Below are positions 1 to 50,626 of a DNA stretch of 64,000 nucleotides, piece after piece. Numbering within the stretch: position 1 is the first letter of the stretch; every line of letters starts with the position of its first letter. The stretch spans positions 186,001 to 250,000 of the IMG/VR virus record IMGVR_UViG_3300031951_000003. One strand, 5' to 3'. The notes below the pieces were generated by a model. It did no database searches, was not told the origin of the DNA, and saw only the letters and a list, made by a program, of their open reading frames with translations. The translations under genes and the position numbers were made by a program.

Positions 1-845
1 TTTCCCATATCACTTGGCTGCCAAGCTCTTATTTTTCCACCTTCCAAAACACCAAAGAAAGGACCATTGGTTGCTCTTTCTCCTTTTGATGTTAATCCCG
101 TTGCCCCATAAAAGAAAGCTTCTCCTGTGTGTGATGAACCAGGATAATAAATTCCAACAACATCTCCCAAATCTAAGTCGCTAAAAGAAGACTGAGATGG
201 AACAGCTTGTGAAATTAAGGACTTAATTCTACCGAATTGACCTGATGAATTAATTTGATTTTCACTTAAGCCTTTCGAATTTTGGTTGATTTGTGAAAAA
301 ATGTCAGCCATTTCATTGAGATTACCTCCTTTGAATATTTTACTAAACCCATCTCCTTTGTTTGGAAATGAATTAGACAATCTGTATGCATGCCACGCAT
401 TACCCTGTCTTACACCCGTCTGACTTGCAACATATTGAGAGCATCCTATTGGACCTTTTTTTGCAACATTTTCCTTTCCTTTACAAACATCGTTCAAAGT
501 ATCTTTAACGGTGGGGTATAATACATATCTACCACAACGTTTGGTCAACCCACTATCACTAGGAACAGTTCCTTCTTGATTTCCCTCAAAATATGGTATT
601 CCTAATTTTTTTGACGTATAAGGACCTAATACCCCCTTACCGTTACCTCCATTTTTTAATTGGAAATCCTTTATTGCAATTTTTGTCAATTTTCCTATAA
701 TCCCATCAACTCCATCCCTATTTGGACCAGATTTCCCTAAGTTGTATCCTAATTCCTTAAGTTTTGTTTGAGCGGCTTTAACGAAATCAGTGTAAGATTC
801 GTATTGTTCGAGAATGACTCTCATTTTATTTCTTAAATTTTTCAT
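1..845 (-). CDS. Peptidoglycan-binding domain protein with putative Cys-amidase/CHAP-like region (3'-truncated at window edge; not in ORF track)
   Basis: Manual translation from ATG 845: MKNLRNKMRVILEQ...VKAAQTKLKELGYNLGKSGPNRDGVDGIIGKLTKIAIKDFQ (PG_binding_1-like), later GCSQYV...GNAWH; open to the window edge; ATAAATA at 852-858. Confidence 0.7.
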   Translation of the reverse strand, partial: MKNLRNKMRVILEQYESYTDFVKAAQTKLKELGYNLGKSGPNRDGVDGIIGKLTKIAIKDFQLKNGGNGKGVLGPYTSKKLGIPYFEGNQEGTVPSDSGLTKRCGRYVLYPTVKDTLNDVCKGKENVAKKGPIGCSQYVASQTGVRQGNAWHAYRLSNSFPNKGDGFSKIFKGGNLNEMADIFSQINQNSKGLSENQINSSGQFGRIKSLISQAVPSQSSFSDLDLGDVVGIYYPGSSHTGEAFFYGATGLTSKGERATNGPFFGVLEGGKIRAWQPSDMG

Positions 846-890
846 ACTTTAATAAATATGTTTTTATTTCTATTCTACCATCAGTTTTAT

Positions 891-1835
891 TTAAAACTTC
901 AAACAACCAAAACTATTCATGTATCTTACTACTTTTTCCAAGTAACCAATACTTGTTTGTTGACCCGAACCTTTGTTTGGAAAATAATTGGCAATTGGTT
1001 TGTTTTGTAAAACCATAATTTTCAGTTCAGGTTTAGATTGTGGAAAGGGTTGATATAACGTTTTGTCACACGGTGCAGCATAATTCGGGTCTTTTGTTTC
1101 ACACCATCTAGTGATTAGACCTGGCATGTTGTGTGCAACTATTGCTAAATCCATTGCGTTGTTACCTGTCCCATCAATTCCCTTGATACCCTTAGTTCTA
1201 ACTGCAATCGGATTAACGGATGGACCTGTTCCATTACCTACTTTTAAGGCTCTTTTGTAATCATCATTGATTCTGTGTAATGTCCCTATTCCTTGTTTCA
1301 AAGAACTGAAAGAATCTGAATAGGAACCAACTTTTTTATCTAAACCATAATCATTCCAAGTTTTTTCGGTAAATTGTGCTGAACCCAAACTCATTTGTTT
1401 CTGAGGTTTACCTGAAATTTTATTCACCAAATTTAACCCACCCACAGCGGATTTTGGGAGAAATCCAAACCCTATCGAATGTAAAAATTCTGCCGCGTCA
1501 TCACTCCATTCACTATAAGTACGGAATAAAGTTTCCCTTCCAATAATTCCGATTGCGGCTTTGGCCATGAAAAGCAGTGTATTAGCATCAACCCCAAGTT
1601 CACTCATCAATTTTTGTTTGTTTTGAACTACGTATTCTGCAAATGGTCTTACGTCCTCGGGAATACACGGGTATTTCTTCTCTAAACTGATATTTTCATT
1701 TTGTTTACTGACTCTTGCGTTTTCACGTGAATTATCTAGCCCAAATGAAGTTATTCCTGGTCCTGTTTGTTCTTTAAGAATTCGTAAGATAATATTCTCT
1801 AAATCCGTCTCAGTTAATTTGATACTTTTTTTCAT
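891..1835 (-). CDS. Leader-B protein (MKKSIKLTETDL...LKEQ), possibly lysozyme-like fold
   Basis: Start reassigned to ATG 1835 below TATTTAT (1842-1848); payload unassigned. Confidence 0.6.
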   Translation of the reverse strand: MKKSIKLTETDLENIILRILKEQTGPGITSFGLDNSRENARVSKQNENISLEKKYPCIPEDVRPFAEYVVQNKQKLMSELGVDANTLLFMAKAAIGIIGRETLFRTYSEWSDDAAEFLHSIGFGFLPKSAVGGLNLVNKISGKPQKQMSLGSAQFTEKTWNDYGLDKKVGSYSDSFSSLKQGIGTLHRINDDYKRALKVGNGTGPSVNPIAVRTKGIKGIDGTGNNAMDLAIVAHNMPGLITRWCETKDPNYAAPCDKTLYQPFPQSKPELKIMVLQNKPIANYFPNKGSGQQTSIGYLEKVVRYMNSFGCLKF

Positions 1836-1967
1836 TATGAAATAAATATCCACCAAAAATGACTTTTAGTGATGAGGGAAATAATTATTATTCTTTCAGA
1901 ATAATAATAAGAATTAATAAAAATAAAAAAAAAAGAAAAAAAACTAGTAATACTAGTTCTAGGGATT

Positions 1968-2249
1968 TTAGCAAACCGCCACACAAGAATCGAAACCTAA
2001 AATATCCTCTATAATTTTTGTTACTTCATTACAAGGGTCGTCCAAGAAACCAATGTGAGAGTCGGGTTCATCTCTCCGATTGTCTTTGATGGTTAGAAAA
2101 ACAGCATGAGAATCGGGAATCCATTTATTTGATTTGTCATCATATTTTTGGGTGGGGACGATTTGTATTTCTTTGATTAAAATATCCCCTCCGAAGGAGG
2201 TGTTCAACGAAGACTCAACAAGTCGTTTTATTTTTCCAATCTTGTCCAT
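1968..2249 (-). CDS. Hypothetical protein
   Basis: ORF track, co-oriented and overlapping the upstream gene. Confidence 0.55.
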   Translation of the reverse strand: MDKIGKIKRLVESSLNTSFGGDILIKEIQIVPTQKYDDKSNKWIPDSHAVFLTIKDNRRDEPDSHIGFLDDPCNEVTKIIEDILGFDSCVAVC

Positions 2250-4657: not shown

Positions 4658-4659
4658 TA

Positions 4660-6839: not shown

Positions 6840-7556
6840 TTAAGTCAAATCAGTTGAAATCTTTTTACTCAATGTTGCATAAATCGGGGATGCAATATTT
6901 TTTACTTGATTTGCAATCTGCCCAACTAACGCCTCATATTTACCACCTGTAGCGTATCTAAGACCCCTCTTGTTTACAAAATTTTTAATCAAATCAGCAC
7001 CTGAGGTTGTATCTGTCAAATAACTTCTTGCAATCAAATCAAAATATGCTTGAATTCCTGATTGAACTGTGTTATGAAAAATGTTTTTACCGCTATTAAC
7101 GTTCCCTACATTGAATGGATTTTTTGTTCGGATTGGTCTTGAGGATGGATTTTTATCGAACCCTCCTTCTGCCGCTAATTGAGAAAGTGCCAATTCCACG
7201 GGAACGTATCTTCCGTATTTGGTTTGAGCATTTTTTGCTCCGTCGGCTAACATTGAACCTGTTATTCCCAAAAGGTTGTGTTTCCTTGTTGAAATAAATT
7301 TATCTGCAATACTTTTATAAGTTTCATATTCTGCAGGATTATTTAAATTCATCACAGGGAATTCACCTGTAGGCACGTTCAAATTTGTTTTGGTGTCTAT
7401 ATTTGATGAAGGGGAAGATGACGTATCAGTTTGATTTGGTTTTGTTGTCGAGAGAAACGTATCTAAAATCCCTTTACTGTCTTTTGAACCTATCAATGAT
7501 TTAAGAATCAAGTCTGTAAGGTCTTGCTCCGATATTAAAAATTTCTTTTTTCCCAT
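6840..7556 (-). CDS. Leader-A protein with glucosaminidase/lysozyme-like (GH73-like) domain
   Basis: LALSQLAAEGGF...NPFNVGN...SGIQAYFDLI...YAT; leader KKFLISEQDL. Confidence 0.6.
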   Translation of the reverse strand: MGKKKFLISEQDLTDLILKSLIGSKDSKGILDTFLSTTKPNQTDTSSSPSSNIDTKTNLNVPTGEFPVMNLNNPAEYETYKSIADKFISTRKHNLLGITGSMLADGAKNAQTKYGRYVPVELALSQLAAEGGFDKNPSSRPIRTKNPFNVGNVNSGKNIFHNTVQSGIQAYFDLIARSYLTDTTSGADLIKNFVNKRGLRYATGGKYEALVGQIANQVKNIASPIYATLSKKISTDLT

Positions 7557-15731: not shown

Positions 15732-16196
15732 TTAATTACATGAATTCATAAAATCTTTAGCCTGTGAAATCAAAGATTTTACTTTGACAGAATAAGTGCC
15801 AGCCTTACATTGTGGTTTAGGACAATAAACTCTATCTAATAATTTATAATAATCTTCCTCACCACCTATACTTTCAATTTTTCTAAAATCCTGCCATAAC
15901 TTGTAATCTTCAACAGATTGTTTCCAATTGTCATATCTTGCGTGACCCCTATATTCACCAGTAGCCGTCTTCGGTCTAATTTTGGCGTATTTCATACCAA
16001 AACAATTATTATTGGCTTTGAATATTTCACTTTCGAAATGACCTGTTTCTAATATTGCTTGGGCAATTGCTATTTCAGGAAACCTGATTCCTGAATTCTT
16101 CACATAACATGCAAATTCTGATGGAGAAAAGTTCTCCACTTCTGAATCAACACCCATGATTTCTTTAATTCTTGTTATGTCCTCGTAAAGATTCAT
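15732..16196 (-). CDS. Leader-C protein with GH73/FlgJ-type glucosaminidase domain
   Basis: MNLYEDITRIKEIMG; IAIAQAILETGHF...NNCFGMK...YDNWKQSVEDY. Confidence 0.75.
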   Translation of the reverse strand: MNLYEDITRIKEIMGVDSEVENFSPSEFACYVKNSGIRFPEIAIAQAILETGHFESEIFKANNNCFGMKYAKIRPKTATGEYRGHARYDNWKQSVEDYKLWQDFRKIESIGGEEDYYKLLDRVYCPKPQCKAGTYSVKVKSLISQAKDFMNSCN

Positions 16197-19651: not shown

Positions 19652-20680
19652 TTAAACGTTATAAGTTGTATTTTGATTGTTCGGCGGATTGTTTTTTGCG
19701 TATGCATTAAATCTATTTAAAACATTTTGAATAGTTTGACCTGAATTCATAATACTCATCATTATCCAGAACGCGTTTACATCACCTGTATTAACTATTT
19801 TTACGAAGTCTTCCACCGTGATATCTTGACCAGGTTTTACCCCTATTATGTTTCTTATCCCATATAATCTTGATAAGATTTCAGTATCTTCATAGATATA
19901 TTCTTTTTTATTATTTCTCAACAATCGTAGGTAACTGTTTATTAGGTCGACAGGTTTTTTTATCCCCTGCGCTCTTAAATCATACGCGTATTTATACCAT
20001 TTATCTTTCTCGGCTTTAGTTAATTCTGACTTACGGGCTTCAGTTTCTGAACCGAAAAGGGACCCCAAACTTGTCCATATAGATTCTTTTTTGTTTCTAT
20101 CAATTTTCAAATCAACATCTATTTTTTGTTTAGGGTGGAATGGTTTCACATTATAAAGAATGTGTTGAATTTCATGAATTAAAATTCCGAGAGGGTCTTC
20201 GGTGTTGTTTGCACAATTAATATAAATAATCCCTTCAAAAGGGCTATAACCCATCACTGTATTTGGTCTAACGTGGGCAATTGAATCACTTCTCGGGTCT
20301 GAATAATATTGAAATCGCAAATCAGACAAAGCCTCGTTATAATCTTTGAATATCTCAGAGGCTTCGTTTGTAGAAATTTTCCAATTTTTTGCAAATTTAT
20401 TTAAAGTGACAGGACTTCTCAACCAATCTTTCCACCAATTTACCGCCTGACTTAATGTTGTTGTATTGTAACTCTTCATACAGTTGTCTCTTTCTTTTGC
20501 AAAATCCGCACGTCCTGCAATATTATTGTTTACATAAGTAGAACTTGCTGGTAAACGGGGTTGACCAAATTTCAAAGGTGGTATAGATGGGGTTGGTTTT
20601 TTTTGTTCGTCCAAATTATTGGATATTGCACCACCCATGAGTTCTTTAACTCGTGATATATTTTCATTCAAATTCATCAA
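19652..20680 (-). CDS. Leader-C protein with HEXXH metallopeptidase motif
   Basis: MNLNENISRVKELMG; ILIHEIQHILY; later EILSRL. Confidence 0.65.
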   Translation of the reverse strand: MMNLNENISRVKELMGGAISNNLDEQKKPTPSIPPLKFGQPRLPASSTYVNNNIAGRADFAKERDNCMKSYNTTTLSQAVNWWKDWLRSPVTLNKFAKNWKISTNEASEIFKDYNEALSDLRFQYYSDPRSDSIAHVRPNTVMGYSPFEGIIYINCANNTEDPLGILIHEIQHILYNVKPFHPKQKIDVDLKIDRNKKESIWTSLGSLFGSETEARKSELTKAEKDKWYKYAYDLRAQGIKKPVDLINSYLRLLRNNKKEYIYEDTEILSRLYGIRNIIGVKPGQDITVEDFVKIVNTGDVNAFWIMMSIMNSGQTIQNVLNRFNAYAKNNPPNNQNTTYNV

Positions 20681-20720: not shown

Positions 20721-21713
20721 TTATATCAAACGTTCGAATGAATTTTTTACCCTTTGTTTAAAAGAAGGGTTTTCCATATCAGGTGGAATTTGAAGTTCAC
20801 CGGAACCTATCGTAATTATACTTTTACCATCAGAGGGTAACCAAATACTTTTTTGGTGGGGCTTTATAAATTTTTCAATTTCAAAAATATCAGGTTCCTT
20901 GAAATTAATACAACCCTTACTCATTTTCCTTCTTTTACAACTCTGAGGGGAAAGGTCCGCGGTTGTTAAAGCATCTATTCTTGGTCTTTTTTTCGTTCCA
21001 TGAAATGCAGTTACAGTTTCGTTACCATCAAAGGTTTCAAATGACATGTATTTCTCTCCATAAGTTGCAATGTCTGATTGTCTCGCAATCTCATCTTCCA
21101 AAGTATCTTTGATTCCTGCAGTTCTTCTGAATATTCCAGCAGGGGTACTTTGTTCAGGCCATCTATCCTCTGTAGGAGCAAAACATTGCTCCATTCTCTT
21201 AACAAACCCTTCCATCCCTTCTTTTTTCAAATTTGCAACACTGTCCTTAAATTTATTCCAAACCTGTTTATAAAAATCTTGAACAACAAACTTGTCGCTT
21301 TGGTCCTCTTTACCTGTTAAAACCAAAAATGTTCTAACAAGTTCATATCCAGGATTGAATAGATAAATTCTGGCTTGAGAATCATCCAATATGGTAAATT
21401 TCTCATTTCCCATTATTTTATTTTTTCTGAGATAATCAACTTGGTCTTGAACTTGTTTGGATGCACTTGGTATTTTGTTAGTGAATAGTCGTTCAACCTT
21501 AGACTTTTCGGCAAACGCTTTACTAACAACAGACGGGTCTATCTTTTGGGGATACTTTCCGTCTTTTATTCGAGGGAAAACCCTCGAGGCTTCTACTGAA
21601 CCCATAGGTGATGACACGGGTCCACCTTGATTGAACAAACCTTCTTTTGTATAAAAAGGGGAAGTTTGTTCCAATAAAAAATTGTATTGTGATTCTGTGA
21701 TTAGATATTTCAT
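20721..21713 (-). CDS. Leader-A protein with L,D-transpeptidase (YkuD)-like domain
   Basis: MKYLITESQY; TPAGIF; AFHGT...MSKGCINF (H...C dyad). Confidence 0.6.
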   Translation of the reverse strand: MKYLITESQYNFLLEQTSPFYTKEGLFNQGGPVSSPMGSVEASRVFPRIKDGKYPQKIDPSVVSKAFAEKSKVERLFTNKIPSASKQVQDQVDYLRKNKIMGNEKFTILDDSQARIYLFNPGYELVRTFLVLTGKEDQSDKFVVQDFYKQVWNKFKDSVANLKKEGMEGFVKRMEQCFAPTEDRWPEQSTPAGIFRRTAGIKDTLEDEIARQSDIATYGEKYMSFETFDGNETVTAFHGTKKRPRIDALTTADLSPQSCKRRKMSKGCINFKEPDIFEIEKFIKPHQKSIWLPSDGKSIITIGSGELQIPPDMENPSFKQRVKNSFERLI

Positions 21714-21753: not shown

Positions 21754-22368
21754 TTAAACTTTTGATATTGTTTGATTAAATTGGTCTGAATTAATTTGTT
21801 GAGAAATATAATTAGAAAGAAGTTGCTTGTATTTTTGTTCACCGAATTTTTGAATGTATCTATCTTTGTATTTGGTTATTGATGGTTCCACGGATTTTAA
21901 TAAACCTTCGATAGTTTTTAGTTCTGCTTGGATGACATTTTTATTTGTTGCAACCTTTTTCACCACTTGGACCTCAACTGGAGTTAATCTTGTTTTGGAA
22001 AGTAATTTTTCTGCCAACGCAACCGACCCTCTAACACCAACCTGATTTAGTTCAGGTATGAGACCCAAAAGTTTACCCGATAAAGGGATTAAAGAAAATA
22101 GAGTAATAATGGTTGCAGCTTTCTTATTTCCTTCTTGGAAATGTCTTGCAGCATCTCCAAGCCCAACCATAGATGATATAAATGGTCCAATAACAGGAAT
22201 TAGAACAGAAACAATACCCAAAAAAACATTCATGTCATGACTCGTCAAAGCTTTGTCCCAACCTTTTACAACGCTTTTTTGTTGACCTTGGGGAACATAA
22301 TTTCCCCAACCCGTCATGCTCTGTTCTGAAATTAATTTTAATTGTCTTTCAGTTATGATGTACTTCAT
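21754..22368 (-). CDS. Leader-A protein with hydrophobic helical hairpins (pre-toxin-like)
   Basis: MKYIITERQLKLISEQ; LIPVIGPFISSMVGLGDAA...EGNKKAA...LFSLIP. Confidence 0.6.
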   Translation of the reverse strand: MKYIITERQLKLISEQSMTGWGNYVPQGQQKSVVKGWDKALTSHDMNVFLGIVSVLIPVIGPFISSMVGLGDAARHFQEGNKKAATIITLFSLIPLSGKLLGLIPELNQVGVRGSVALAEKLLSKTRLTPVEVQVVKKVATNKNVIQAELKTIEGLLKSVEPSITKYKDRYIQKFGEQKYKQLLSNYISQQINSDQFNQTISKV

Positions 22369-22405: not shown

Positions 22406-22951
22406 CTATTTAAGGACATACACCCAAGCGTTTTGCTTGTAATTACCGAATTTTTTGAGTGCTGCGGTTGTTCTGTGCCAACCTTCCAATAAGTCATACT
22501 TTCCGTCCTTTGTTTCAACCACGATAATTGGTTCAGAAGACAAACCACCCTTTTCCAAATTAGATTGTTGAAAATCGTGTCTTTCGGTGTCTTTGGTAAT
22601 GTCAGTTCTTCTGAAACCTTCAATCTTTTTTCTCAAATCTTTCTGAACAAACTCTGTGAATGATTCCAACGACAAATCCAATATTTTATTTTCCCAATGA
22701 CCTTTACCGTGCCCTTCAACAAAACTAACGAGATAACTTCTCACAAGGTCTTTATATTCTTCAGGACTTTCATCTTTTATGTCTTTTGTGTTTCTATACA
22801 ACCAATCTCTTAAAACATATTCAGGCCAATCAATTCCCGTAATTTCTTTACTCTTATTTCTAAGATAATTCATATAACCTTCACGAGTTTCAACAATAAT
22901 CCCCATCAATTCTTTTACTCGTGATATATTTTCGTTCAAGTTCATCATCAA
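22406..22951 (-). CDS. Leader-C protein with ParB/Srx-like domain
   Basis: EPIIVVETKDGKYDLLEGWHRTTAA. Confidence 0.65.
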   Translation of the reverse strand: MMMNLNENISRVKELMGIIVETREGYMNYLRNKSKEITGIDWPEYVLRDWLYRNTKDIKDESPEEYKDLVRSYLVSFVEGHGKGHWENKILDLSLESFTEFVQKDLRKKIEGFRRTDITKDTERHDFQQSNLEKGGLSSEPIIVVETKDGKYDLLEGWHRTTAALKKFGNYKQNAWVYVLK

Positions 22952-22985
22952 TAAATATCACGACCCACTTGTCTGAGATGGTCAA

Positions 22986-27307: not shown

Positions 27308-27384
27308 ATTACAATAAATACTTTGGGAAATAAAAAACCCCCTTCGTGAATGAAGAGGGTCTTGTTATAGAAATTATTTTTTTT

Positions 27385-27858
27385 TTAAATCCCAATACAA
27401 CTTAACAATGCTTTTACATCTTTCGCTGGGTCAGAACCTAAACCACCTTGGTCTTCAGGTAATCCTGTTAAAAAGATTACAATTAGTGAAGATAATGCCA
27501 ACACACCTCCAGCAACCAATCCAACAGGGTTTGCAATTAACATAGCAACGATTCCAAGAGCATAAGCTCCAGCACTTGTAGTTAAAAACATTAAACTTGT
27601 GAGTTGTTTTGATGTGATACATTTTTTGATTTTTTCCTGTATTTTAGGGTCAGGTTTTGCACCACTTTCAAATTTTTGTATTGCCGCATCAATCATTGAT
27701 TGTGCTTCAGCTGATTCGGTCAAATATGGTTTTACATCACCTTGTTTAGTTTCAACCAATTGTTTGAACTTCTCGTTGTAAACTCTCATTCCACCTTTAT
27801 GTTGTTCACGGATGGCGTTTTTTTCTTCTTCAGAAATATTGTTTAAAATGTGTTTCAT
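27385..27858 (-). CDS. Leader-E protein with C-terminal TM hairpin
   Basis: MKHILNNISEEEKNAIREQH; two long hydrophobic helices. Confidence 0.65.
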   Translation of the reverse strand: MKHILNNISEEEKNAIREQHKGGMRVYNEKFKQLVETKQGDVKPYLTESAEAQSMIDAAIQKFESGAKPDPKIQEKIKKCITSKQLTSLMFLTTSAGAYALGIVAMLIANPVGLVAGGVLALSSLIVIFLTGLPEDQGGLGSDPAKDVKALLSCIGI

Positions 27859-27942
27859 AATTTTAATTTTATTATAAATATATTCGGAAATAAAAAACCC
27901 CCTTCGTAATTGAAGAGGGTCTTGTTATTTTGAAATGTTTTA

Positions 27943-28449
27943 TTAGAGCGGACCATATTTTCTCATTCTTCTTGATGCTTGTCTACATTCCTTACTCGTT
28001 CTTGTGTTGCCACCAATCAATTTGATTAGTTTAACAACCAACATTAAAATGATAATACCTGCAAACACCTGAATGAAAACAACAGGGATTGCCATTGCAC
28101 CAATTGTTACAATCTCTCCCACTTGTTCACTTTGAGTTTTTCTTTTGAAAATTGATTTAACCTTTTTGATTAACTCCTTAACATCTTTGGCTGAAGTCAG
28201 ACCATCGATTTGTTCTTTGATTTTCTGAAGCATTGTCTTTTGTTTCTCATCCGCAGTTGGAGGAGTTTCAAGTGGACAATCGTTCAACGCAAATTCAATA
28301 TCTTCAGTCGATACGGGTTCTTCCCCAACTGTTGATAGTTCATTATTAATCACGTCAAGAACTTGAGATTCATCTTCTTTCAATAATCTCTTTTCCAATC
28401 TGATGTTGGCTTCTTGTATGTGTCTGATTTTACTATAACTTCTATTCAT
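27943..28449 (-). CDS. Leader-D protein with C-terminal TM helix
   Basis: MNRSYSKIRHIQEANIRLEKRLLKE. Confidence 0.65.
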   Translation of the reverse strand: MNRSYSKIRHIQEANIRLEKRLLKEDESQVLDVINNELSTVGEEPVSTEDIEFALNDCPLETPPTADEKQKTMLQKIKEQIDGLTSAKDVKELIKKVKSIFKRKTQSEQVGEIVTIGAMAIPVVFIQVFAGIIILMLVVKLIKLIGGNTRTSKECRQASRRMRKYGPL

Positions 28450-28550
28450 AATTTGATTTTATAATAAATACAAAATTTTCCCAAAAATTTTTAAATGAAA
28501 AAACCCCCTTCGAAATTGAAGAGGGTCTTGTTCTATAATTCACAATGATG

Positions 28551-28850
28551 TTATTCATCAAACATTGATTCCAATTCTTTAACAACCTCCTTTGCATAAT
28601 CAATAATCTCATCGGCTTGTTCATCAGTCAAATCGTCGTCTTGATAAGCCTCATGCATTATTTTATAAATTTCATTAATACATCTTTCAACCTCATCCAA
28701 ATCCTCCTCCTCATCCATTGCGTGATTTGCAACCATATCAATTACTTTAAAATAATCTTCAGTAGGGTCATCCTCTCTTCTTTGTTCCTTTACTATCTTA
28801 TTAACCAATCTTGTTAAGTCAGATTCTGTGAGTTTTACTATCTTTTTCAT
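28551..28850 (-). CDS. Leader-B protein with highly acidic payload
   Basis: Start moved to 28850: MKKIVKLTESDLTRLVNKIVKEQ; DEEEDLDEVE, DDDLTDEQADE. Confidence 0.65.
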   Translation of the reverse strand: MKKIVKLTESDLTRLVNKIVKEQRREDDPTEDYFKVIDMVANHAMDEEEDLDEVERCINEIYKIMHEAYQDDDLTDEQADEIIDYAKEVVKELESMFDE

Positions 28851-28940
28851 ATGAAATAAATATCCCAAAAATTTTAAAATGAAAAAACCCCCTTCGTAAT
28901 TGAAGAGGGTTTTGTTCTATAAATTAAGATTATTAGTATC

Positions 28941-29381
28941 TTACAAACTTTGTATCAATTTGAATACTTGACCCCTATTCATATTTTCAGTTTTAATTAA
29001 TTTGGGTTTCTCGTCCCCAACCCTTGTATAATATTCAACTTTGTATGGTCCATTAATGTCTTTTAGTCCACTAAAATATATTTTTTTGAATTCATAATTA
29101 GGGTGATTATTTTTACTCAATTGTATAAAATCCCCTTCATCATCCGAAAAATTTTCAACTTTGTTGTTTCCTTTTGCCATACTAATAAGGTTCTCGGTAT
29201 AGATATTTAGTTTCTGTTTTTTTACATTATTATATCCCTTTTCTCTAAGTATATTTTTAATTTTATTTAAAAAACCACCATATATATCATTTTCACCATC
29301 AGTCTTTGTATTTTGTTCTTTAATAACTTTATTAACCAAACGAATCAAATCGTTTTCTGTTAATCTTATAATCTTTGACAT
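28941..29381 (-). CDS. Leader-B protein, paralogue of 30815
   Basis: MSKIIRLTENDL; shared GPY/FxVEY(Y/F)...KxIKTE C-terminal motif. Confidence 0.65.
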   Translation of the reverse strand: MSKIIRLTENDLIRLVNKVIKEQNTKTDGENDIYGGFLNKIKNILREKGYNNVKKQKLNIYTENLISMAKGNNKVENFSDDEGDFIQLSKNNHPNYEFKKIYFSGLKDINGPYKVEYYTRVGDEKPKLIKTENMNRGQVFKLIQSL

Positions 29382-29491
29382 AGAATTTATTTTCCAATAA
29401 ATATACCAAAAAAGGAGAATTTTTTCCCAAAAATTTTAAAATAAAAAACCCCCTTCTTTTCAGAAGAGGGTCTTGTTTTAAAAAAATATAA

Positions 29492-30007
29492 TTAAATTAA
29501 AGAGAGCTTAATTTTTACACCATTACCCGCGTCAATAGTTGCACTTTTTCCTTGATTACCAGCCAAAGATTGTAATCCCGCATTTAGTTTGTCTTGAGGT
29601 ACTCTAAATTTCATCCATCCATCGGAGGTCAGAGCGTCGGTAGGAATTAATTCTTTCATGATTTTTTTCATAGCATTACCTGATGGTTGAGCTTCTCCCA
29701 GTAATGTTCCTTGTCTGTCTCTTCTAACATTTCTCAAAATTACATTAAAAGGCACGTTAGGTAAAAATGAACCTGGGTCATACACCCCTTTTACACTGTA
29801 TTTGTAAGTTGTGTTTGGAATGTTCTGTCCTTTGTTGTCTCTTTGTGAAAGATAAATTGTACCAGTTCCGTCGCTTGAAGCATTAACCAAAGCTGGAGTT
29901 GCAAGAACAGTTAACAAAGGAACTTGAGCCATAGGTGCTTGTTCTTTTATAACTCTCTTAACCAAATTCAACAAGTCGGATTCAGTTAATTTTATAATTT
30001 TCGACAT
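29492..30007 (-). CDS. Leader-B beta-rich protein
   Basis: MSKIIKLTESDLLNLVKRVIKEQ. Confidence 0.65.
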   Translation of the reverse strand: MSKIIKLTESDLLNLVKRVIKEQAPMAQVPLLTVLATPALVNASSDGTGTIYLSQRDNKGQNIPNTTYKYSVKGVYDPGSFLPNVPFNVILRNVRRDRQGTLLGEAQPSGNAMKKIMKELIPTDALTSDGWMKFRVPQDKLNAGLQSLAGNQGKSATIDAGNGVKIKLSLI

Positions 30008-30110
30008 ATAACTTATTTTACTATAAATAGACCCAAAAAGGACAATTTTTTCCCAAAAAATTTTTTTAAGAAAAAACCCCCTTCGTAATTGAAGAGGGTC
30101 TTATTTCAGA

Positions 30111-30407
30111 TTAACTTTGACCGAATCGTCTGTAGTATCTTATTTCATAATATCTTTTATCCTTACAATCTATTCTTGTTCTAGAACCATACTCATATGA
30201 GGGAATACAAAAACCTGATTTAATATTTTTTATTAGTTCTTCAGTTGATTTAACCGCATTAGGGTCTGATTTTATTGTTTGAGGAGTTGATTGTTCAGAA
30301 AGATTGTGCATACCAAATCTACTTTCAGGTTGTTCCTTCAATAATCTTTTTTCCAACATTAAATTTGATTCCTGAATATGTCTTATTTTACTGAAACTTC
30401 TATTCAT
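30111..30407 (-). CDS. Leader-D protein
   Basis: Start moved to 30407: MNRSFSKIRHIQESNLMLEKRLLKEQ. Confidence 0.65.
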   Translation of the reverse strand: MNRSFSKIRHIQESNLMLEKRLLKEQPESRFGMHNLSEQSTPQTIKSDPNAVKSTEELIKNIKSGFCIPSYEYGSRTRIDCKDKRYYEIRYYRRFGQS

Positions 30408-30462
30408 AAAATATGTTTCCAATAAATACTCCCAAAAATTTTTTTCTCAGTTGAAGGATAAA

Positions 30463-30714
30463 TTAAATCAAATGGTCGTGTTTTAGAAAAAGAATATAAC
30501 CTTCAATATCTCTCAATACTTGGTTTACATTCCTACCCGACAAATGATAAAACCCATGTTTACTTTTTTTGATTGTTATAAGTTCCCCATTTGAAAAATA
30601 TATTCTTTTCGGTGACCTTCTAACAACCGAGACCTTATTACTCCCATTCATATAATGGTCCCCAACATTACAATCCAAAATAAACTGATGTGATTTTATC
30701 CATAAATTTTCCAT
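30463..30714 (-). CDS. Hypothetical protein under a host-type promoter
   Basis: No leader; sigma-A promoter at 30719-30750. Confidence 0.55.
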   Translation of the reverse strand: MENLWIKSHQFILDCNVGDHYMNGSNKVSVVRRSPKRIYFSNGELITIKKSKHGFYHLSGRNVNQVLRDIEGYILFLKHDHLI

Positions 30715-30718
30715 AACA

Positions 30719-30750
30719 CAAAAATAAGAAATGTTCTTTTTTTTCCCAAA
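30719..30750 (-). promoter_or_regulatory. Bacteroidota sigma-A promoter
   Basis: Minus strand TTTG-N20-TATTTTTG. Confidence 0.7.
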
Positions 30751-30814
30751 AATTTCAAATTAAAAAACCCCCTTCGTTTCGGAAGAGGGTCATGTTTATA
30801 GTTAAATTTCTTTA

Positions 30815-31198
30815 TTACCCAAAGTTTTGGAGAAGTTGCCCAATTTTATATCCATCCAATTTTTCTGTTTTGATTTTTTTTCCACCTTTAAAATATTCTA
30901 CAACGAAAGGTCCGAACATACTATAGTTATTCAAATAAATTATTGTAGATTCTGGACTTGTCCCCGTGTCACTTAAAATCAATTTTTTTTGACCTCCTTC
31001 ATCATAAAAATCAACCGTGTAAGGTCTCTTGTACATTGATAAAAGTGAATAATTGCTTTTAATAAGTTTGAATCCTTTCTTTAAAAAATCTTTTTTTACC
31101 ATTTGTAAAAAAGATTCTAAAGTCTCTGATTGTTCTTGAATTACTCTTTTCGCCAAACGAACCAAATCTTGTTCTGTAAGTTTTATAACTTTTGACAT
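30815..31198 (-). CDS. Leader-B protein
   Basis: Start moved to 31198: MSKVIKLTEQDLVRLAKRVIQEQ. Confidence 0.65.
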   Translation of the reverse strand: MSKVIKLTEQDLVRLAKRVIQEQSETLESFLQMVKKDFLKKGFKLIKSNYSLLSMYKRPYTVDFYDEGGQKKLILSDTGTSPESTIIYLNNYSMFGPFVVEYFKGGKKIKTEKLDGYKIGQLLQNFG

Positions 31199-31308
31199 AT
31201 AAATAATTTTATTATAAATATACCGAAAAAGGACAATTTTTCCCAAAAATTTTTTTTGCGTTATTCAAGGTATTATCCCCCCCAAAACTGACATTTTGAC
31301 CTACATAA

Positions 31309-37084: not shown

Positions 37085-37759
37085 TTATTTTTTTATTTTT
37101 ACACAGTTTGGGTATCTTTTCCCAAACATCGTTTTCATACCCTTTTGGGTGTATCCTTTCCAGCATCTCTCTTTCAGTTCTCCTTCTGTTTGTTCCATCT
37201 TTTGACCCGACTTAGGTCTTATGACAATTATTTGTCCGACGTATAAGTTTTGTGGATTGATTGGCGTTTCGTAAAAGTCAAACCAACATCTTCTGAAGTC
37301 AGTTTTACTGACAACCCTCATTTCTTCTAAGTAAGGGTCAAGTATGAATAAGTTATCATCATTATACCCTATAACAACTGAAGAGTGACCTTCAGGTGGG
37401 TCACCACAAAACCAATCAACAATTACAGGGACGTTAGCATCAACCAACTTAATAACTTCATCAATTGTAGAATTATTTTTAAGATAAACATCAAATCCGA
37501 GTGCCTCTGCAGCACATGCCATATCTTCACTTTTACACCCCAATTCATAGGTATGGTCACAAATCTCCGCAATATCTTTTTCACTCATGTTTTTTCCGTA
37601 GTAACCAAATACCATCCTGAGTGATGCGGGTCCACAGGTGCTATCATCTGATTGCAAAAAATGAGGAACCTCCAATAACTTTGTTGGTTGTTGATTAACT
37701 TGTTCAACAATTTCAGTTATAATTTGGACTAATTTTTCTTCAGTTAATCTTATCTTCAT
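37085..37759 (-). CDS. Leader-B protein with C39-like cysteine peptidase and a CWKGY...YPNCVK tail
   Basis: QSDDSTCGPASLRMV; GHSSVVIGY; ILDP. Confidence 0.75.
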   Translation of the reverse strand: MKIRLTEEKLVQIITEIVEQVNQQPTKLLEVPHFLQSDDSTCGPASLRMVFGYYGKNMSEKDIAEICDHTYELGCKSEDMACAAEALGFDVYLKNNSTIDEVIKLVDANVPVIVDWFCGDPPEGHSSVVIGYNDDNLFILDPYLEEMRVVSKTDFRRCWFDFYETPINPQNLYVGQIIVIRPKSGQKMEQTEGELKERCWKGYTQKGMKTMFGKRYPNCVKIKK

Positions 37760-37769: not shown

Positions 37770-39107
37770 TTATAACATACCATCAATACTCGAACCAATA
37801 GATTGATAAATAGGATGATTCGAATGTGGCTCAATTTTACCTATCGGTGGTTCAATCAAGGTTGCCCCCTGTTGTTTAAATTGTTTATAGTAATTTCTCA
37901 CTTCTTTTTCTGTTATGTTTTTCAATCCACCCCATCCCCAAGAACCTTGAACGACGTAAAAGTTAGCGTTTGGAAACTTTGATTTCAGAACGCTAAACAA
38001 TCTGGGTATATCATCCTTGGTAAATTTACCAAATCCCCCATTAGTCCCAATTACTATAATTACATTGGAAACGTCATTACTCTTGGGATATTGTGAAACT
38101 GCGTCTGTCAACCATGAAACAGTTTTTCCACCTTCCCAAAGACCATCAATTCCACCTGATTTGGTCAACCTCGACGCTTTAGTTGTATTCATATCAACAT
38201 ATGGGACTTGTGAATCCCCAATAATGATATTTTTACCTTGAGAAATAGTATTCTTACCTTTAGTTATCGTCTTTTTGTTATTGGCTAAGTCTATGGCTTG
38301 TTCTAAATCCTTCACACCGAATTTTTGTGCTTGTGGTAAAAACCCTGTCATGACAAAAAGTTTTGGATTAGACATTAGCATTCGGTTCCAACCATTGTAG
38401 TTAGTTGTATAATCCCATATTTTTTTAGTGTCACCCCAACCGTTTTGGTAAAGGTAACCTCCAACATTTCCACCTGTTCTATCGGCACCGTGAGCACAGT
38501 GTATGAGAACATTACCTTGGCTAAGTAATGAATTAACTTTATCTTGGTCTTTAGTAGATGAAAGTTTAAAGAATTTAACCCCTTTTGATTCTGCTAAATT
38601 CTTTTCTGATTGTATTGTTGTCATCGGGTGTGTCGAGTAATGTCTTGAATCACGACCGTCTCCGTTGAATCTGATGATAGTTTTTATTCGGTATTTGTCG
38701 ATAAGCTCTGACAAATAATCTTTACCATTAAGTGTTACAGGTATCTGTGCAGAACGGTAATTATTTTTCCCATCAGGAATCAAGTGAAAATTGAACTCTT
38801 TACTGAGTGTCTCATCTTTTACATCACCAATATATTTCTGCGCAATTTGTTCTCTTCGATTGTTGAAAACCTCTGGTTTCATTCCAGCTTTAAATGCCTC
38901 GTGTGCCGCCTTTGTGAATGGACCATACTTCCCGTCAACACCATCCTTGTTCGGACCAAACTTTCCAATGTAATATTTCTTTGATGTTAAGAAATTTTGT
39001 AAATCCTTAATTTTAGGGTCAACGTCATAGGATATTTCGAAACTTTCGTCTTCGACCGCTTCCCCCATGAGAACTCTGATTCTTCGTATGTTTTCTTGCA
39101 GATTCAT
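37770..39107 (-). CDS. Leader-C multidomain protein: PG-binding + tyrosine/dual-specificity phosphatase + SGNH-like hydrolase
   Basis: Start moved to 39107 MNLQENIRRIRVLMG; DLQNFL...DGVDGKYGPFT; NYRSAQ; LIHCAHGADRTG; IIGDSQ...IGTNG...HP. Confidence 0.7.
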   Translation of the reverse strand: MNLQENIRRIRVLMGEAVEDESFEISYDVDPKIKDLQNFLTSKKYYIGKFGPNKDGVDGKYGPFTKAAHEAFKAGMKPEVFNNRREQIAQKYIGDVKDETLSKEFNFHLIPDGKNNYRSAQIPVTLNGKDYLSELIDKYRIKTIIRFNGDGRDSRHYSTHPMTTIQSEKNLAESKGVKFFKLSSTKDQDKVNSLLSQGNVLIHCAHGADRTGGNVGGYLYQNGWGDTKKIWDYTTNYNGWNRMLMSNPKLFVMTGFLPQAQKFGVKDLEQAIDLANNKKTITKGKNTISQGKNIIIGDSQVPYVDMNTTKASRLTKSGGIDGLWEGGKTVSWLTDAVSQYPKSNDVSNVIIVIGTNGGFGKFTKDDIPRLFSVLKSKFPNANFYVVQGSWGWGGLKNITEKEVRNYYKQFKQQGATLIEPPIGKIEPHSNHPIYQSIGSSIDGML

Positions 39108-43726: not shown

Positions 43727-43727
43727 C

Positions 43728-49297: not shown

Positions 49298-49598
49298 CTA
49301 AGTGGTGAATTGTTTCTTTGGATGGTCTATTCTTTTTATCTGAAGCTTTTTTCATCATTTTTTCAAACTGTCTTGCTTGGTCTTTGACCATTTCAGAATC
49401 AATTTTGTAAATTCGACCATCCGTTCCATCTAAATTTAATCTTACACCTTCGGTTGTAAAGATGGAAATTGATTCATATCTACATAAATTATCGAAGTCC
49501 CATACCGTTGTGGAATGAAGTCCTTGAACCTCTCCTTTGTTGATTCCACCATATTTTGTGAAGTGAATGAATTTATCACCTTTTTTAAACATCTCCAT
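49278..49598 (-). CDS. Hypothetical protein
   Basis: ORF track. Confidence 0.5.
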   Translation of the reverse strand: MEMFKKGDKFIHFTKYGGINKGEVQGLHSTTVWDFDNLCRYESISIFTTEGVRLNLDGTDGRIYKIDSEMVKDQARQFEKMMKKASDKKNRPSKETIHHLDEDKKT

Positions 49599-49917
49599 CT
49601 GAATCCCAATCTGTTAATACGAATTCTAATCTAACTGCCTCGATATGTCCATACCTATTTACCCAAGCATTTCCCTTGAGTCCACCACTCGAAGAAAAGT
49701 AAGTTGCTTTCGAACATTTCCCTTTTTTTGCCAATTCCATAGCATCTCTCAGCCTACCGACAGCAGATGATTTCAACATTTCGATTGTGGGTGTATTTGA
49801 ATCAAAAGCCCAAGTCCATCGAAGAGTCTTCATAGCGATTTCACATTTACGGAAATCGAAATTGTCGAGAATCTCGGCAATCATTTTGTTTTCTTGCTCA
49901 ATGATTTTGTTACTCAT
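49585..49917 (-). CDS. Hypothetical protein
   Basis: ORF track. Confidence 0.55.
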   Translation of the reverse strand: MSNKIIEQENKMIAEILDNFDFRKCEIAMKTLRWTWAFDSNTPTIEMLKSSAVGRLRDAMELAKKGKCSKATYFSSSGGLKGNAWVNRYGHIEAVRLEFVLTDWDSDGDV

Positions 49918-49954
49918 GAGAAGAATAATAAAAAATAAAATTTATAAAGGAAAA

Positions 49955-50626
49955 TTACGGTTTTATGTATACCTTGGTGCCTGAAGGAATTGAGTTCAAC
50001 ATCCATTGAATTGCATTGTTTGAAACTCTAATACAACCGTTGGAACGAGGAGTTCCTAAGTTTTTCTCTTTGTTTGTTCCGTGGAAATATATGTTCCTTG
50101 AAAATGCGTTTTTGTTACATGGCTCTAACCCATCGAGTTCCAAAATACCTGTGAGAACCTCAGCCACGTGTCTTTGTCCCTTCTCATCCACTCTCATCGA
50201 GTCTTTGTCAGGACCCAAAATTTTACCTGTTGGAGTTTTAGCCACAATCACCTCATATGGTTTTGCCTCAACTTTTCCTTTTACTTGTAACAAACCTGTT
50301 GGTGTTTCCTTATTATCAGGACGATTGTTAAAACCATTCGCACCAGTTGATACAATAACAGTTTTGATTGCGGTTTTACCGTCTTGTGTGTAATACATTC
50401 TTTGTTCAGGTCCCCAAACTATCAGAAGTTTTTCTCCCTGTTTTATCATTCCCTTTTCAACCAATTCAGAATAAAGTTCTTTCCAATCTTCAGCTTCAAT
50501 TATTTCAGGACTACAATCGGTAACCTTTGGTTTCTCTTCTTCATCATCAAACCAAGTGCTCGGTTTATACCAAGCCTTTTGTTCTTGTAACTTCGCCAAC
50601 TGTGATTTGGTTATGATATACTTCAT
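49955..50626 (-). CDS. Leader-A protein with L,D-transpeptidase (YkuD) domain
   Basis: MKYIITKSQL; VSTG...TPTG; IYFHGT...GTPRSNGCIRV. Confidence 0.85.
   Translation of the reverse strand: MKYIITKSQLAKLQEQKAWYKPSTWFDDEEEKPKVTDCSPEIIEAEDWKELYSELVEKGMIKQGEKLLIVWGPEQRMYYTQDGKTAIKTVIVSTGANGFNNRPDNKETPTGLLQVKGKVEAKPYEVIVAKTPTGKILGPDKDSMRVDEKGQRHVAEVLTGILELDGLEPCNKNAFSRNIYFHGTNKEKNLGTPRSNGCIRVSNNAIQWMLNSIPSGTKVYIKP

What the first reader, a model, noticed from the sequence alone, without database searches (positions are those of the whole stretch)
1..50626. Arsenal of leader-tagged cell-wall enzymes outside any lysis cassette
Seen: leader-tagged PG-binding/putative amidase (1..845), two GH73-like glucosaminidases (6840, 15732), two YkuD-like L,D-transpeptidases (20721, 49955), a C39 peptidase (37085) and a PG-binding fusion (37770). 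None has a signal peptide. Inference: delivered from the virion to open or re-crosslink the host peptidoglycan during entry. Phage L,D-transpeptidases could instead stiffen the wall against superinfection or premature lysis.
Basis: partly seen in the sequence, partly recalled or inferred. Interest (0 to 1): 0.6.

Follow-up and report, generated by a model that had tools for sequence, protein, structure and literature searches.

The report
Leader-tagged cell-wall enzymes of a jumbo phage
A 321-kb uncultured phage puts the same short N-terminal tag on eight cell-wall enzymes and about two dozen other proteins, and the tag looks like the signal that T4-type phages use to load proteins into the head for injection, though no experiment has tested this.

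Summary
All seven genes are at the stated coordinates. Four pass Pfam: PG_binding_1, GH73, YkuD and C39. The other calls held up with further evidence. ORF 6840 is GH73-like. ORF 20721 has a YkuD fold. The "amidase" is an NlpC/P60 fold. ORF 37770 is a fusion of a PG-binding-like domain, a phosphatase and an SGNH-like domain. None has a signal peptide, and a leaderless endolysin lies outside the window.

The leader is real and much more general than the finding says. At least 31 of 116 window ORFs carry it, in interchangeable types. Types B and C occur on more than 200 proteins in IMG/VR, are almost always N-terminal, and sit on dozens of unrelated cargoes. Type B is essentially absent from cellular genomes. 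Types B and C end in hydrophobic-x-Glu, the cleavage motif of the T4 prohead protease. This genome and all six near-complete leader-bearing genomes tested encode that protease.

Best reading (about 0.55): the leaders are capsid-targeting propeptides, and the cell-wall enzymes are a subset of a head-packaged, ejected effector set. This is inference only. There is no virion proteome and no cultured relative. I class it as a new variant of a known kind.

The parts
3..845 (-). Leader-like N-terminus + PG_binding_1 + NlpC/P60-fold cysteine peptidase. The ORF continues past the window start and is 349 aa in full.
   Evidence: Pfam PG_binding_1, E 1.5e-9. AF2 model pLDDT 91.6. The 13 best structural matches are all NlpC/P60, Z 8.1-9.8. 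Conserved Cys/His/His.
891..1835 (-). Type B leader + possible SLT-like lytic transglycosylase. This is a motif-level lead only and was not in the finding.
   Evidence: Leader HMM i-E 2e-5. The GxAQF..TW and A.VAHN motifs align to the SLT part of P0240. The Pfam SLT model finds nothing in the genome.
6840..7556 (-). Type B-like leader + Ser/Thr-rich linker + GH73-like glucosaminidase. The family is widely conserved.
   Evidence: More than 520 homologs, some with PF01832. Invariant Glu and GH73-like motifs. 107 of 120 homologs carry a leader-like N-terminus.
15732..16196 (-). Type C leader + GH73 glucosaminidase.
   Evidence: Pfam Glucosaminidase, E 7.7e-14. Endolysin PHROGs.
19652..20677 (-). 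Type C leader + protein with an HExxH motif (possible metallopeptidase).
   Evidence: Sequence motif HEIQH. No family hit.
20721..21713 (-). Type A leader + divergent YkuD-fold domain with insertions.
   Evidence: Orthologs carry type A, B or C leaders on the same cargo.
21754..22368 (-). Type A leader + membrane protein with a hydrophobic segment. A paralog lies at 26657-27307.
   Evidence: Hydropathy 2.19 over 19 residues.
22406..23546 (-). Two type C leader genes (22406-22945 and 22986-23546) with weak ParB-like matches.
   Evidence: PHROG ParB-like, E 1.2e-5 and 1.9e-4.
23574..24470 (-). Type C leader + P-loop NTPase/kinase-like protein.
   Evidence: Walker A motif. PHROG ATPase, E 1.8e-4. 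Weak CPT hit.
27308..31254 (-). Array of single-gene cassettes, each with a terminator hairpin, a promoter-like TTTTTGGGA...TATTTAT, a leader (types B and D) and a small variable cargo.
   Evidence: Direct-repeat families D1-D3 and D6, 4-7 copies, spacing 384-691 nt. Upstream alignment.
37085..37759 (-). Type B-like leader + C39-like cysteine peptidase + short C-terminal Cys-rich module.
   Evidence: Pfam Peptidase_C39_2 E 1.2e-18 and C39 E 4.6e-14. The C-terminal module matches phrog_9737/727/4359.
37770..39107 (-). Type C leader + PG_binding_1-like + PTP/DSP-type phosphatase + SGNH-like hydrolase.
   Evidence: The start at 39107 follows from the leader and the TATTTAT motif 13 nt upstream.
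49955..50626 (-). Type A leader + YkuD L,D-transpeptidase-family domain with its His and Cys motif intact.
   Evidence: Pfam YkuD, E 1.1e-20. Genome-wide search E 9.8e-22.

Best explanation
The window lies in a 321-kb jumbo myovirus with direct terminal repeats and a T4-type head module. The host is probably a member of the Bacteroidota. About a quarter of the window's genes start with one of a few interchangeable 15-23-residue leaders. The main forms are type B (M-K-K-I-I-KLTESDL-x-R-I-V-K-R-V-I-x-E), a shorter type A, and type C (MNLQENI-x-RIKE-V-MG-h-h-x-E).

I propose that these leaders are capsid-targeting propeptides. They would dock the protein to the prohead core. The phage's gp21-like S77 protease would then cut them off after the hydrophobic-x-Glu at the end of the leader. 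The cargo would stay in the head and leave it with the DNA at infection.

The eight peptidoglycan-directed cargoes would then be one functional subset of a broad ejected effector set. They comprise two GH73-like enzymes, two YkuD-fold proteins, an NlpC/P60 peptidase, a C39-like peptidase, the PG-binding/phosphatase/SGNH fusion, and perhaps an SLT-like enzyme. A separate leaderless endolysin would carry out lysis.

Shown: the domains, the leaders, their distribution, the conserved motif at the leader end, and the co-occurrence with the protease. Inferred: targeting, cleavage, packaging, ejection, and any action on the wall during entry.
For: 1. Head machinery. The genome has Peptidase_S77 (E 1.5e-22), a Gp23 major capsid protein, a portal and a large terminase. 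The gene order is portal, core, protease, scaffold-like, capsid protein, as in T4, and a leader-tagged gene follows directly. The capsid protein has I-N-E|A just before its conserved mature N-terminus.

2. Cleavage motif. 90 of 94 type B leaders and 64 of 69 type C leaders have [LIVM]-x-E at one fixed place, exactly where conservation stops. The background rate is 1.7-1.9% per position, and my search patterns did not constrain these positions. T4 gp21 cuts after L/I-x-E. A 10-residue N-terminal capsid-targeting sequence is enough to load foreign proteins into T4 heads (PMC9026906; PMC5694885).

3. Portability.
- Type B sits on 58 cargo clusters and type C on 30.
- Orthologs of the YkuD-like protein carry type A, B or C leaders.
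- 119 of 125 type B pattern matches are N-terminal.
- Synonymous codons vary while the residues stay the same, so selection acts on the peptide.

4. Virus-only. In 596 Gb of prokaryote genomes there are only about 6 N-terminal hits, all on MAG contigs.

5. Co-occurrence with the protease. S77 is present in 16 of 20 large leader contigs, including 6 of 6 that are at least 90% complete, and in 9 of 24 small fragments. No complete small genome lacks it.

6. Cargo resembles known head-packaged effectors. It includes lysozyme-type enzymes, peptidases, ParB-like proteins, kinase-like proteins, and an ART-PolyVal-like protein on a type C leader in a relative (PMC5512222).

7. The same TATTTAT promoter-like motif precedes the tagged genes and bona fide virion genes: the protease, the head-tail adaptor and a baseplate wedge subunit.

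8. Lysis is covered elsewhere. A leaderless PG_binding_1 + GH19 endolysin lies at genome 173618-174457.
Against: - There is no virion proteome, no cleavage data and no cultured relative. tblastn of three of these families against 50,697 phage records found nothing useful.
- [LIVM]-x-E is a short motif that any amphipathic helix rich in Ile, Leu and Glu could show.
- The leader has no demonstrated sequence similarity to T4 capsid-targeting sequences.
- In T4, internal proteins enter the cytoplasm, where peptidoglycan enzymes and PG-binding or LysM modules would have no substrate. A route to the periplasm has to be assumed.
- Several tagged proteins have membrane-spanning segments, which is unusual for head cargo.
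- Many type A N-termini belong to small paralogous proteins. There the motif may simply be the first helix of the fold, and the hydrophobic-x-Glu end is not conserved (24 of 94).
- Flavobacterium phage immuto has the same type of head and protease but no type B leader.
- The timing implied by the promoter motif is not established.
Confidence: 0.55

Rival explanations
1. The leader is a phage-specific routing or docking helix that is unrelated to the capsid. For example, it could take folded proteins to the inner membrane or through a phage-made pore into the periplasm late in infection. The phage would then remodel or stiffen the wall from within, or add to lysis.
For: - Among cargoes with any known domain, wall-binding modules recur: PG_binding_1 and LysM in 3 each of 94 type B proteins, and PG_binding_1 and GH73 on type C.
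- Several tagged proteins are membrane proteins.
- Peptidoglycan enzymes need the periplasm.
Against: - The leader is charged and has no hydrophobic core.
- The phage uses ordinary signal peptides on other proteins in the same window.
- Cargoes of cytoplasmic type share the tag: ParB-like, P-loop, ART-like and acetyltransferase-like.
- This reading does not explain the conserved hydrophobic-x-Glu boundary or the link with the S77 protease.
Confidence: 0.15
2. The shared N-terminus is a by-product of a mobile expression cassette of terminator, promoter and first codons. The cassette spreads by recombination and serves transcription or translation start. The peptide itself has no targeting role.
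For: - There are repeated cassettes of terminator, promoter-like element and leader, in 4-7 copies spaced 384-691 nt apart.
- The TATTTAT motif is conserved 11-13 or 20-23 nt before the ATG.
- Near-identical cargoes carry different leader types in related phages.
Against: - Across 98 distinct DNA versions the amino acids are fixed while synonymous codons vary freely. Leu uses 6 codons, Thr 4, Ser 4 and Arg 4.
- Conservation extends 20 or more codons and stops at a defined residue.
Confidence: 0.1
3. The cell-wall enzymes are simply extra endolysins or lysis accessories that wait in the cytoplasm for a holin. The leader is irrelevant to their function.
For: - Endolysins normally lack signal peptides.
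- The PHROG matches of the GH73, PG-binding and C39 proteins are to families labelled endolysin.
Against: - A canonical leaderless endolysin exists elsewhere in the genome.
- YkuD-fold, phosphatase and SGNH domains are not usual lysis enzymes.
- The genes are scattered over 50 kb as separate transcription units among non-lytic tagged genes.
- The tag is strongly conserved.
Confidence: 0.1
4. The leaders are bacteriocin-style leader peptides that the leader-tagged C39 peptidase at 37085 removes.
For: - A C39-family peptidase sits inside the array.
- Type C leaders have an invariant Met-Gly.
- The L-T/S-x-x-D/E-L part of type B loosely recalls double-glycine leaders. That comparison is from memory.
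Against: - There is no Gly-Gly, Gly-Ala or Gly-Ser at the boundary.
- No ABC-transporter fusion or neighbour was seen in the ORF list.
- The peptidase carries the leader itself.
Confidence: 0.05

Closest known systems
T4 internal proteins (IPI-III, Alt) with capsid-targeting sequences cut by prohead protease gp21
   Same: - A short N-terminal tag is shared by unrelated cargo.
- The tag ends in hydrophobic-x-Glu.
- A gp21-family (S77) protease and a T4-like head gene order are present.
- Cargo includes host-directed enzymes.
(PMC9026906.)
   Different: - The tag is 15-23 residues with near-invariant positions, in several interchangeable types.
- It tags about 30 or more genes per genome rather than 4-5.
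- Many cargoes are peptidoglycan-directed.
- No sequence similarity to the T4 tag was shown.
- Packaging is untested.
Ejection (inner-body) proteins of phiKZ, 201phi2-1 and SPN3US, with propeptides cut after Glu
   Same: These are jumbo phages with many head-packaged proteins. Paralog families share N-terminal propeptides and have several cleavage sites per propeptide (PMC5694885).
   Different: Those phages use the diverged S80 protease with a (S/A/G)-x-E site. Here the protease is S77 and the P3 residue is Leu, Ile, Val or Met.
Polyvalent proteins of phages and conjugative elements (Iyer et al. 2017, PMC5512222)
   Same: The domain repertoire overlaps: lysozyme-type enzymes, peptidoglycan peptidases, zincin-like HExxH, ParB-like, kinase-like and ART domains. 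These are proposed to be packaged and delivered at invasion.
   Different: In polyvalent proteins the domains are strung into one giant polypeptide. Here each domain is a separate small gene with its own promoter, terminator and tag.
Virion-associated peptidoglycan hydrolases (T7 gp16, T4 gp5, phiKZ gp181)
   Same: They are peptidoglycan-degrading domains carried by the particle to open the wall at entry. The membership statements are from my own knowledge; the PDB hits to phage tail and baseplate NlpC/CHAP domains are.
   Different: Those are domains of structural tail or core proteins. Here they are small free-standing tagged proteins, and they include YkuD-fold and phosphatase/SGNH modules.
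Type VI secretion wall-targeting effectors (Tlde1 YkuD-fold; Tae/Tse NlpC/P60-like amidases)
   Same: The same folds serve as delivered effectors that act on the target cell's peptidoglycan. Tlde1a, Tae3 and Tse1 appear among the structural matches.
   Different: The delivery machine is different, and there is no homology in the targeting part.
Double-glycine leader peptides and C39 peptidase-containing ABC transporters
   Same: There is an N-terminal helical leader and a C39-family peptidase gene.
   Different: There is no Gly-Gly site, no transporter, and the peptidase itself is tagged.

Membership tests
T4-type capsid-targeting propeptide system | Genome encodes a gp21-family (Peptidase_S77) prohead protease in a T4-like head module | tested here: met
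   PF03420 E 1.5e-22. Gp23, portal and terminase. Gene order.
T4-type capsid-targeting propeptide system | Tag is strictly N-terminal and shared by otherwise unrelated proteins | tested here: met
   119 of 125 matches are N-terminal. 58 and 30 cargo clusters. 27 genuine N-terminal matches against 6 internal in 102,007 residues.
T4-type capsid-targeting propeptide system | Tag ends in the protease site L/I-x-E | tested here: met
   90 of 94 (type B) and 64 of 69 (type C) at a fixed position, against a background of 1.7-1.9%. Not met for most type A small proteins (24 of 94).
T4-type capsid-targeting propeptide system | Proteins are present in virions with the tag removed and are ejected at infection | not testable with these tools
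   No cultured relative.
T4-type capsid-targeting propeptide system | Tag binds the prohead core or protease | tested here: inconclusive
   Complex prediction of the protease with a 45-residue leader piece gave no answer. This is no evidence either way.
GH73 glucosaminidase (PF01832) | Profile match and catalytic Glu | tested here: met
   15732: E 7.7e-14. 6840: no hit on the protein itself, but homologs carry PF01832 and the Glu is invariant, so it is GH73-like rather than a proven member.
YkuD L,D-transpeptidase family (PF03734) | Profile match, His and Cys catalytic motif, YkuD fold | tested here: met
   49955: E 1.1e-20. 20721: only 16.6 bits, below the cut-off, with the motif present. The 20 best fold matches are all YkuD-fold, but the model has pLDDT 54, so I treat it as a probable divergent member.
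NlpC/P60 peptidoglycan endopeptidases | Papain-like fold with conserved Cys and His | tested here: met
   Model pLDDT 91.6. Z 9.8, rmsd 2.7 A over 98 residues to NlpC1, and the 13 best matches are all NlpC/P60. Cys, His and His are conserved in 41 sequences. No Pfam or PDB sequence hit.
Peptidase C39 (bacteriocin-processing) | C39 domain, plus a double-glycine substrate and an ABC-transporter context | tested here: not met
   The domain is present. There is no Gly-Gly in the leaders, and no transporter fusion or neighbour was seen. I file it as a C39-like peptidase of unknown substrate.
Sec or lipoprotein signal peptide | N-terminal hydrophobic core of about 10-15 residues | tested here: not met
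   Hydropathy is 1.27 or less, against 2.5-3.0 in four control proteins of the window. This was a crude test; no dedicated predictor was available.
Canonical endolysin of a lysis cassette | Leaderless muralytic enzyme, usually next to holin or spanin genes | tested here: not met
   The tagged genes are dispersed single-gene units. The leaderless PG_binding_1 + GH19 candidate lies at genome 173618-174457. I did not search for holins.

The most novel reading that the evidence does not exclude
The leaders are not capsid tags. They would be a new, virus-only, Sec-independent routing signal that takes folded enzymes from the cytoplasm of the infected cell to its wall. The phage would then re-crosslink or trim the host peptidoglycan from within during the latent period, for example to resist superinfection or early lysis.
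Probability: 0.1. Interest if true: 0.85.

Novelty: new variant of a known kind. Interest (0 to 1): 0.62.

Why it matters
If the leaders are capsid-targeting tags, they give a sequence-readable label for the whole injected-protein repertoire of an uncultured, widespread clade of jumbo phages. That would be dozens of effectors per genome and hundreds of cargo families, most of unknown function. It would extend the T4 targeting principle to a far larger and more modular scale.

It would also show that YkuD-fold, NlpC/P60, GH73 and phosphatase/SGNH modules are delivered by virions. That would raise the question of how head cargo reaches the periplasm.

The tag could serve as a portable packaging signal for engineering. 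It could also be used as a search key to mine metagenomes for phage effectors.

Tried and rejected
- Near-identity DNA search of 22 kb of the window against 50,697 phage records found no match.
- tblastn of the YkuD protein found only distant Acinetobacter phage hits. tblastn of a 27-residue leader, of an NlpC/P60-like homolog and of the GH73-like protein found no match.
- Flavobacterium phage immuto is the nearest isolate by capsid protein. It has no type B leader; the five pattern hits with one mismatch were all internal or out of context.
- Sequence searches against the PDB gave nothing useful for 20721, 6840, 37770 and 891, nor for the profiles A3 and A5. Profile A2 hit mainly the PG-binding inserts of homologs.
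- NCBIfam added nothing.
- hhalign of the YkuD-like profile against the YkuD protein aligned only the catalytic motif, with probability 5.7%.
- The first AF2 model, of 20721, was poor (pLDDT 54).
- Foldseek against the PDB gave no significant match for the NlpC/P60-like model. The wider structural search did.
- The Pfam SLT model found nothing in the genome, so the SLT call for 891 stays a lead.
- Complex prediction of the prohead protease with a leader piece gave no answer. It is no evidence for or against binding.
I did not try another route, so read laying was not used and there is no expression evidence.
- Paper searches for the leader motif and for capsid targeting in huge phages found no description of this tag.
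- I rejected amphipathicity as an argument. The helical moment was only marginally above shuffles for types B and C, and not at all for type A.

Full report
**Where the window lies**

The window is bases 186001-250000 of a 321,139-bp virus record with direct terminal repeats. G+C is 31-37%. One hundred of 116 non-overlapping ORFs lie on the minus strand, and there are no tRNA genes.

Outside the window the genome has a T4-type head module:
- a Gp23-family major capsid protein;
- a Peptidase_S77 (gp21-family) prohead protease;
- a portal and a large terminase;
- a tail sheath, a baseplate wedge subunit and a head-tail adaptor.

By capsid protein the nearest records are Flavobacterium phage immuto, a Microcystis phage and three uncultured huge phages, at about 43-46% identity over part of the protein. 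Signal peptides in the window end in the A-Q or S-Q pattern that I recall as usual in Bacteroidota. A published group of freshwater jumbo phages up to 331 kb, predicted to infect Bacteroidota, has a similar head region (PMC9723584). I did not test whether this genome belongs to that group.

**Check of the seven genes**

Pfam confirms four above its cut-offs: PG_binding_1 (3..845), GH73 (15732), YkuD (49955) and C39/C39_2 (37085). The other calls needed more work.

- ORF 6840 has no hit on the protein itself. It belongs to a family of more than 520 proteins at 50-63% identity, some of which carry PF01832. The Glu in AEGGF is invariant, and there are GH73-like NPFNVGN and RYA motifs.
- ORF 20721 has 11 homologs beyond its own near-identical database copy, five of them fused to PG_binding_1. 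The motifs FTILDD...TGK, TPxGIF, FHGT and SKGCINF are conserved. The YkuD profile matches it over positions 8-140 at 16.6 bits, below the cut-off. All ten best Atlas look-alikes that carry a family are L,D-transpeptidase clusters, at a score of 0.89, which the tool rates as a lead only. Its AF2 model is poor (pLDDT 54). Even so, the 20 best of 48,161 PDB chains are all YkuD-fold proteins, Z 7.2 to 3.8, and unrelated folds start at 3.7.
- The first ORF is 349 aa in full. Behind PG_binding_1 it has a domain that modelled at pLDDT 91.6. Its 13 best structural matches are all NlpC/P60 endopeptidases, Z 8.1-9.8, 89-98 residues aligned, rmsd 2.2-3.3 A. CHAP endolysins follow. Cys, His and His are conserved in 41 sequences. 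The "putative amidase" is therefore better described as an NlpC/P60-type cysteine peptidase.
- ORF 37770 most likely starts at the ATG at 39107. Its PG_binding_1 signal is sub-threshold. It also has a protein-phosphatase signature (HCxxGxxRT; weak DSPc and Y_phosphatase3 hits) and a GDS-type SGNH-like block. Homologs are labelled as tyrosine/serine phosphatases and occur fused to PG_binding_1, GH24 lysozyme, SLT and GDSL domains.
- An eighth candidate, 891..1835, has a type B leader and three SLT-like motifs in the right order, but the Pfam SLT model does not find it.

None of these proteins has an N-terminal hydrophobic core, whereas four other proteins in the window have clear signal peptides. 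A leaderless PG_binding_1 + GH19 protein at genome 173618-174457 is the obvious endolysin.

**The leader is the main finding**

Strict patterns find it on 31 of 116 window ORFs: 23 of type A or B, 6 of type C and 2 of type D. Looser variants bring the number to about 37. Genome-wide, one pattern hit 27 genuine N-termini, against 6 internal matches in 102,007 residues.

Degenerate DNA patterns for types B, C and A each found 84 to more than 119 stretches in IMG/VR.
- For type B, 119 of 125 matches lie within ten codons of a start codon.
- The 94 distinct complete type B proteins fall into 58 cargo clusters.
- The 69 type C proteins fall into 30 clusters.
- Across 98 distinct DNA versions of type B the residues are fixed while synonymous codons vary, so selection acts on the peptide.
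- Orthologs of the YkuD-like protein carry type A, type C (at 90% identity to the window's protein) or type B. The types are therefore interchangeable, and type A aligns as type B with a five-residue deletion.

Homologs of the NlpC/P60-like and GH73-like proteins in a library of 1.84 billion proteins show still more variants of the same kind of N-terminus. The counts are 44 of 150 and 107 of 120, against one internal match in 66,104 residues.

In 596 Gb of prokaryote genomes the type B pattern gave 21 stretches. About six are N-terminal leaders, all on MAG contigs. The rest are chance matches or an unrelated internal motif. The tag is therefore a viral device, not a host secretion signal.

One caution applies. 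Many type A matches are small paralogous proteins, in which the motif may be the first helix of the fold.

**What the leader most likely does**

In types B and C, conservation stops at a hydrophobic-x-Glu. 90 of 94 type B leaders have it at one position. 64 of 69 type C leaders have it at one of two adjacent positions. The background rate is 1.7-1.9% per position, and my search patterns did not constrain these positions. A second L/I-x-E lies near the start of all three types.

T4 gp21 cuts after L/I-x-E. T4 internal proteins and Alt carry short N-terminal capsid-targeting sequences that are removed by gp21. Ten residues are enough to load foreign proteins into T4 heads (PMC9026906; PMC5694885).

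This genome encodes a gp21-family protease. Its capsid protein has I-N-E|A just before the conserved mature N-terminus. A leader-tagged gene directly follows the capsid gene.

Of 44 leader-bearing IMG/VR records tested, 25 contain S77, including all six that are at least 90% complete. The 19 without it are 6-71% complete by CheckV, and none is a complete small genome.

Where the cargo is recognisable, it matches what is known or proposed for head-packaged effectors: lysozyme-type enzymes, peptidoglycan peptidases, an HExxH protein, ParB-like proteins and kinase-like proteins. In relatives it includes an ART-PolyVal-like protein (25.1 bits, below the cut-off) and an acetyltransferase-like protein (PMC5512222).

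The tagged genes are single-gene units, each with its own terminator hairpin and promoter-like element. The TATTTAT element also precedes the protease, head-tail adaptor and baseplate genes. That suggests, but does not prove, co-expression with virion genes.

**What speaks against this reading**

- Nothing shows packaging or cleavage. No cultured phage has these families, so no proteome can be consulted.
- The motif is short.
- T4 internal proteins go to the cytoplasm, where wall enzymes and PG-binding or LysM modules would be idle. A periplasmic release step must be assumed.
- Some tagged proteins are membrane proteins.
- Phage immuto has the same head type without the type B tag, so the tag is specific to a lineage.

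The rival readings are a non-capsid routing helix, an expression cassette, spare endolysins, and C39-processed leaders. Each explains less of the evidence, and they are scored in their own section.

**Novelty and verdict**

The principle is known from T4 and from phiKZ-like phages: an N-terminal targeting propeptide removed by the prohead protease. Several things appear to be new.
- The tag is long, nearly invariant, and comes in several interchangeable types.
- It marks about thirty or more genes per genome and dozens to hundreds of cargo families across an uncultured jumbo-phage clade.
- The genes have a modular cassette layout.
- Free-standing peptidoglycan-directed cargoes are prominent, including YkuD-fold proteins.

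I found no description of the tag in the paper library. A blank there is weak evidence.

I rate it a new variant of a known kind, with interest about 0.6.

I did not look for another way, so no read-level evidence is included.

Noticed in passing
window 41585-44045: A UmuC/DinB-like Y-family polymerase (IMS, IMS_C; 41585-42793) lies two genes from a short UmuD-like Peptidase_S24 ORF (43728-44045). This looks like a phage-borne translesion-synthesis pair.
   Followed up: partly
window 33623-35036: Two T5orf172/MUG113 genes lie on opposite strands, one of them with an HTH_3 domain. They sit at the only strand switch and GC-skew flip of the window, which suggests a mobile or regulatory island.
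   Followed up: partly
window 8013-8444: A cyclophilin-type peptidyl-prolyl isomerase encoded by the phage (Pfam E 1e-43).
   Followed up: partly
window 45800-49297: UDP-galactopyranose mutase (E 6.8e-76) is followed by two large ORFs that look like glycosyltransferases, judged by eye only. The phage may modify a surface glycan.
   Followed up: partly
window 3201-3908, 8486-9118, 40384-41001, 41004-41588: Four paralogous ORFs look sulfotransferase-like. Only 40384 has a weak Sulfotransfer_1 hit (E 6.6e-5).
   Followed up: no
window 7600-8010, 14860-15681, 51455-51775, 53530-53976: Four phage proteins have classic signal peptides ending in A-Q or S-Q, so the phage does use the host Sec route for some proteins.
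   Followed up: partly
L002:272-742 (genome 100272-100742): This type B leader protein has a C-terminal 40-residue Cys-rich module (phrog_27331). The module also occurs as a small ORF between the scaffold and capsid genes of Pelagibacter and Prochlorococcus podophages. A similar short Cys-rich tail ends the C39 protein.
   Followed up: partly
L139:11415-11939 and L169:2479-2976: In related IMG/VR contigs, type C leaders sit on an ART-PolyVal-like protein (E 3.3e-5, below the cut-off) and on an acetyltransferase-like protein. This recalls T4 Alt.
   Followed up: partly
genome 107417-108133 and window 3-845: The prohead protease and the PG-binding/NlpC-P60 protein both begin with M-K-N-L-R and reach an I-L-E within 14 residues. 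This may be a shared targeting piece or chance.
   Followed up: no
window 27385-27858 and homologs P0262, P0264, P0265, P0292: A further N-terminal type with an E-E-K-N-x-I-L/R core occurs on a window membrane protein and on many NlpC/P60-like homologs.
   Followed up: no
L333, L335, L351 (rumen MAG contigs): A variant of the type B leader occurs several times on short contigs binned with Paludibacteraceae and Bacteroidaceae MAGs from yak rumen. These are probably mis-binned phage fragments, which would extend the tag to gut phages.
   Followed up: no
window 62201-63058: An ORF with many CxxCxG repeats resembling a DnaJ-type zinc-finger array. I saw this in the translation only.
   Followed up: no
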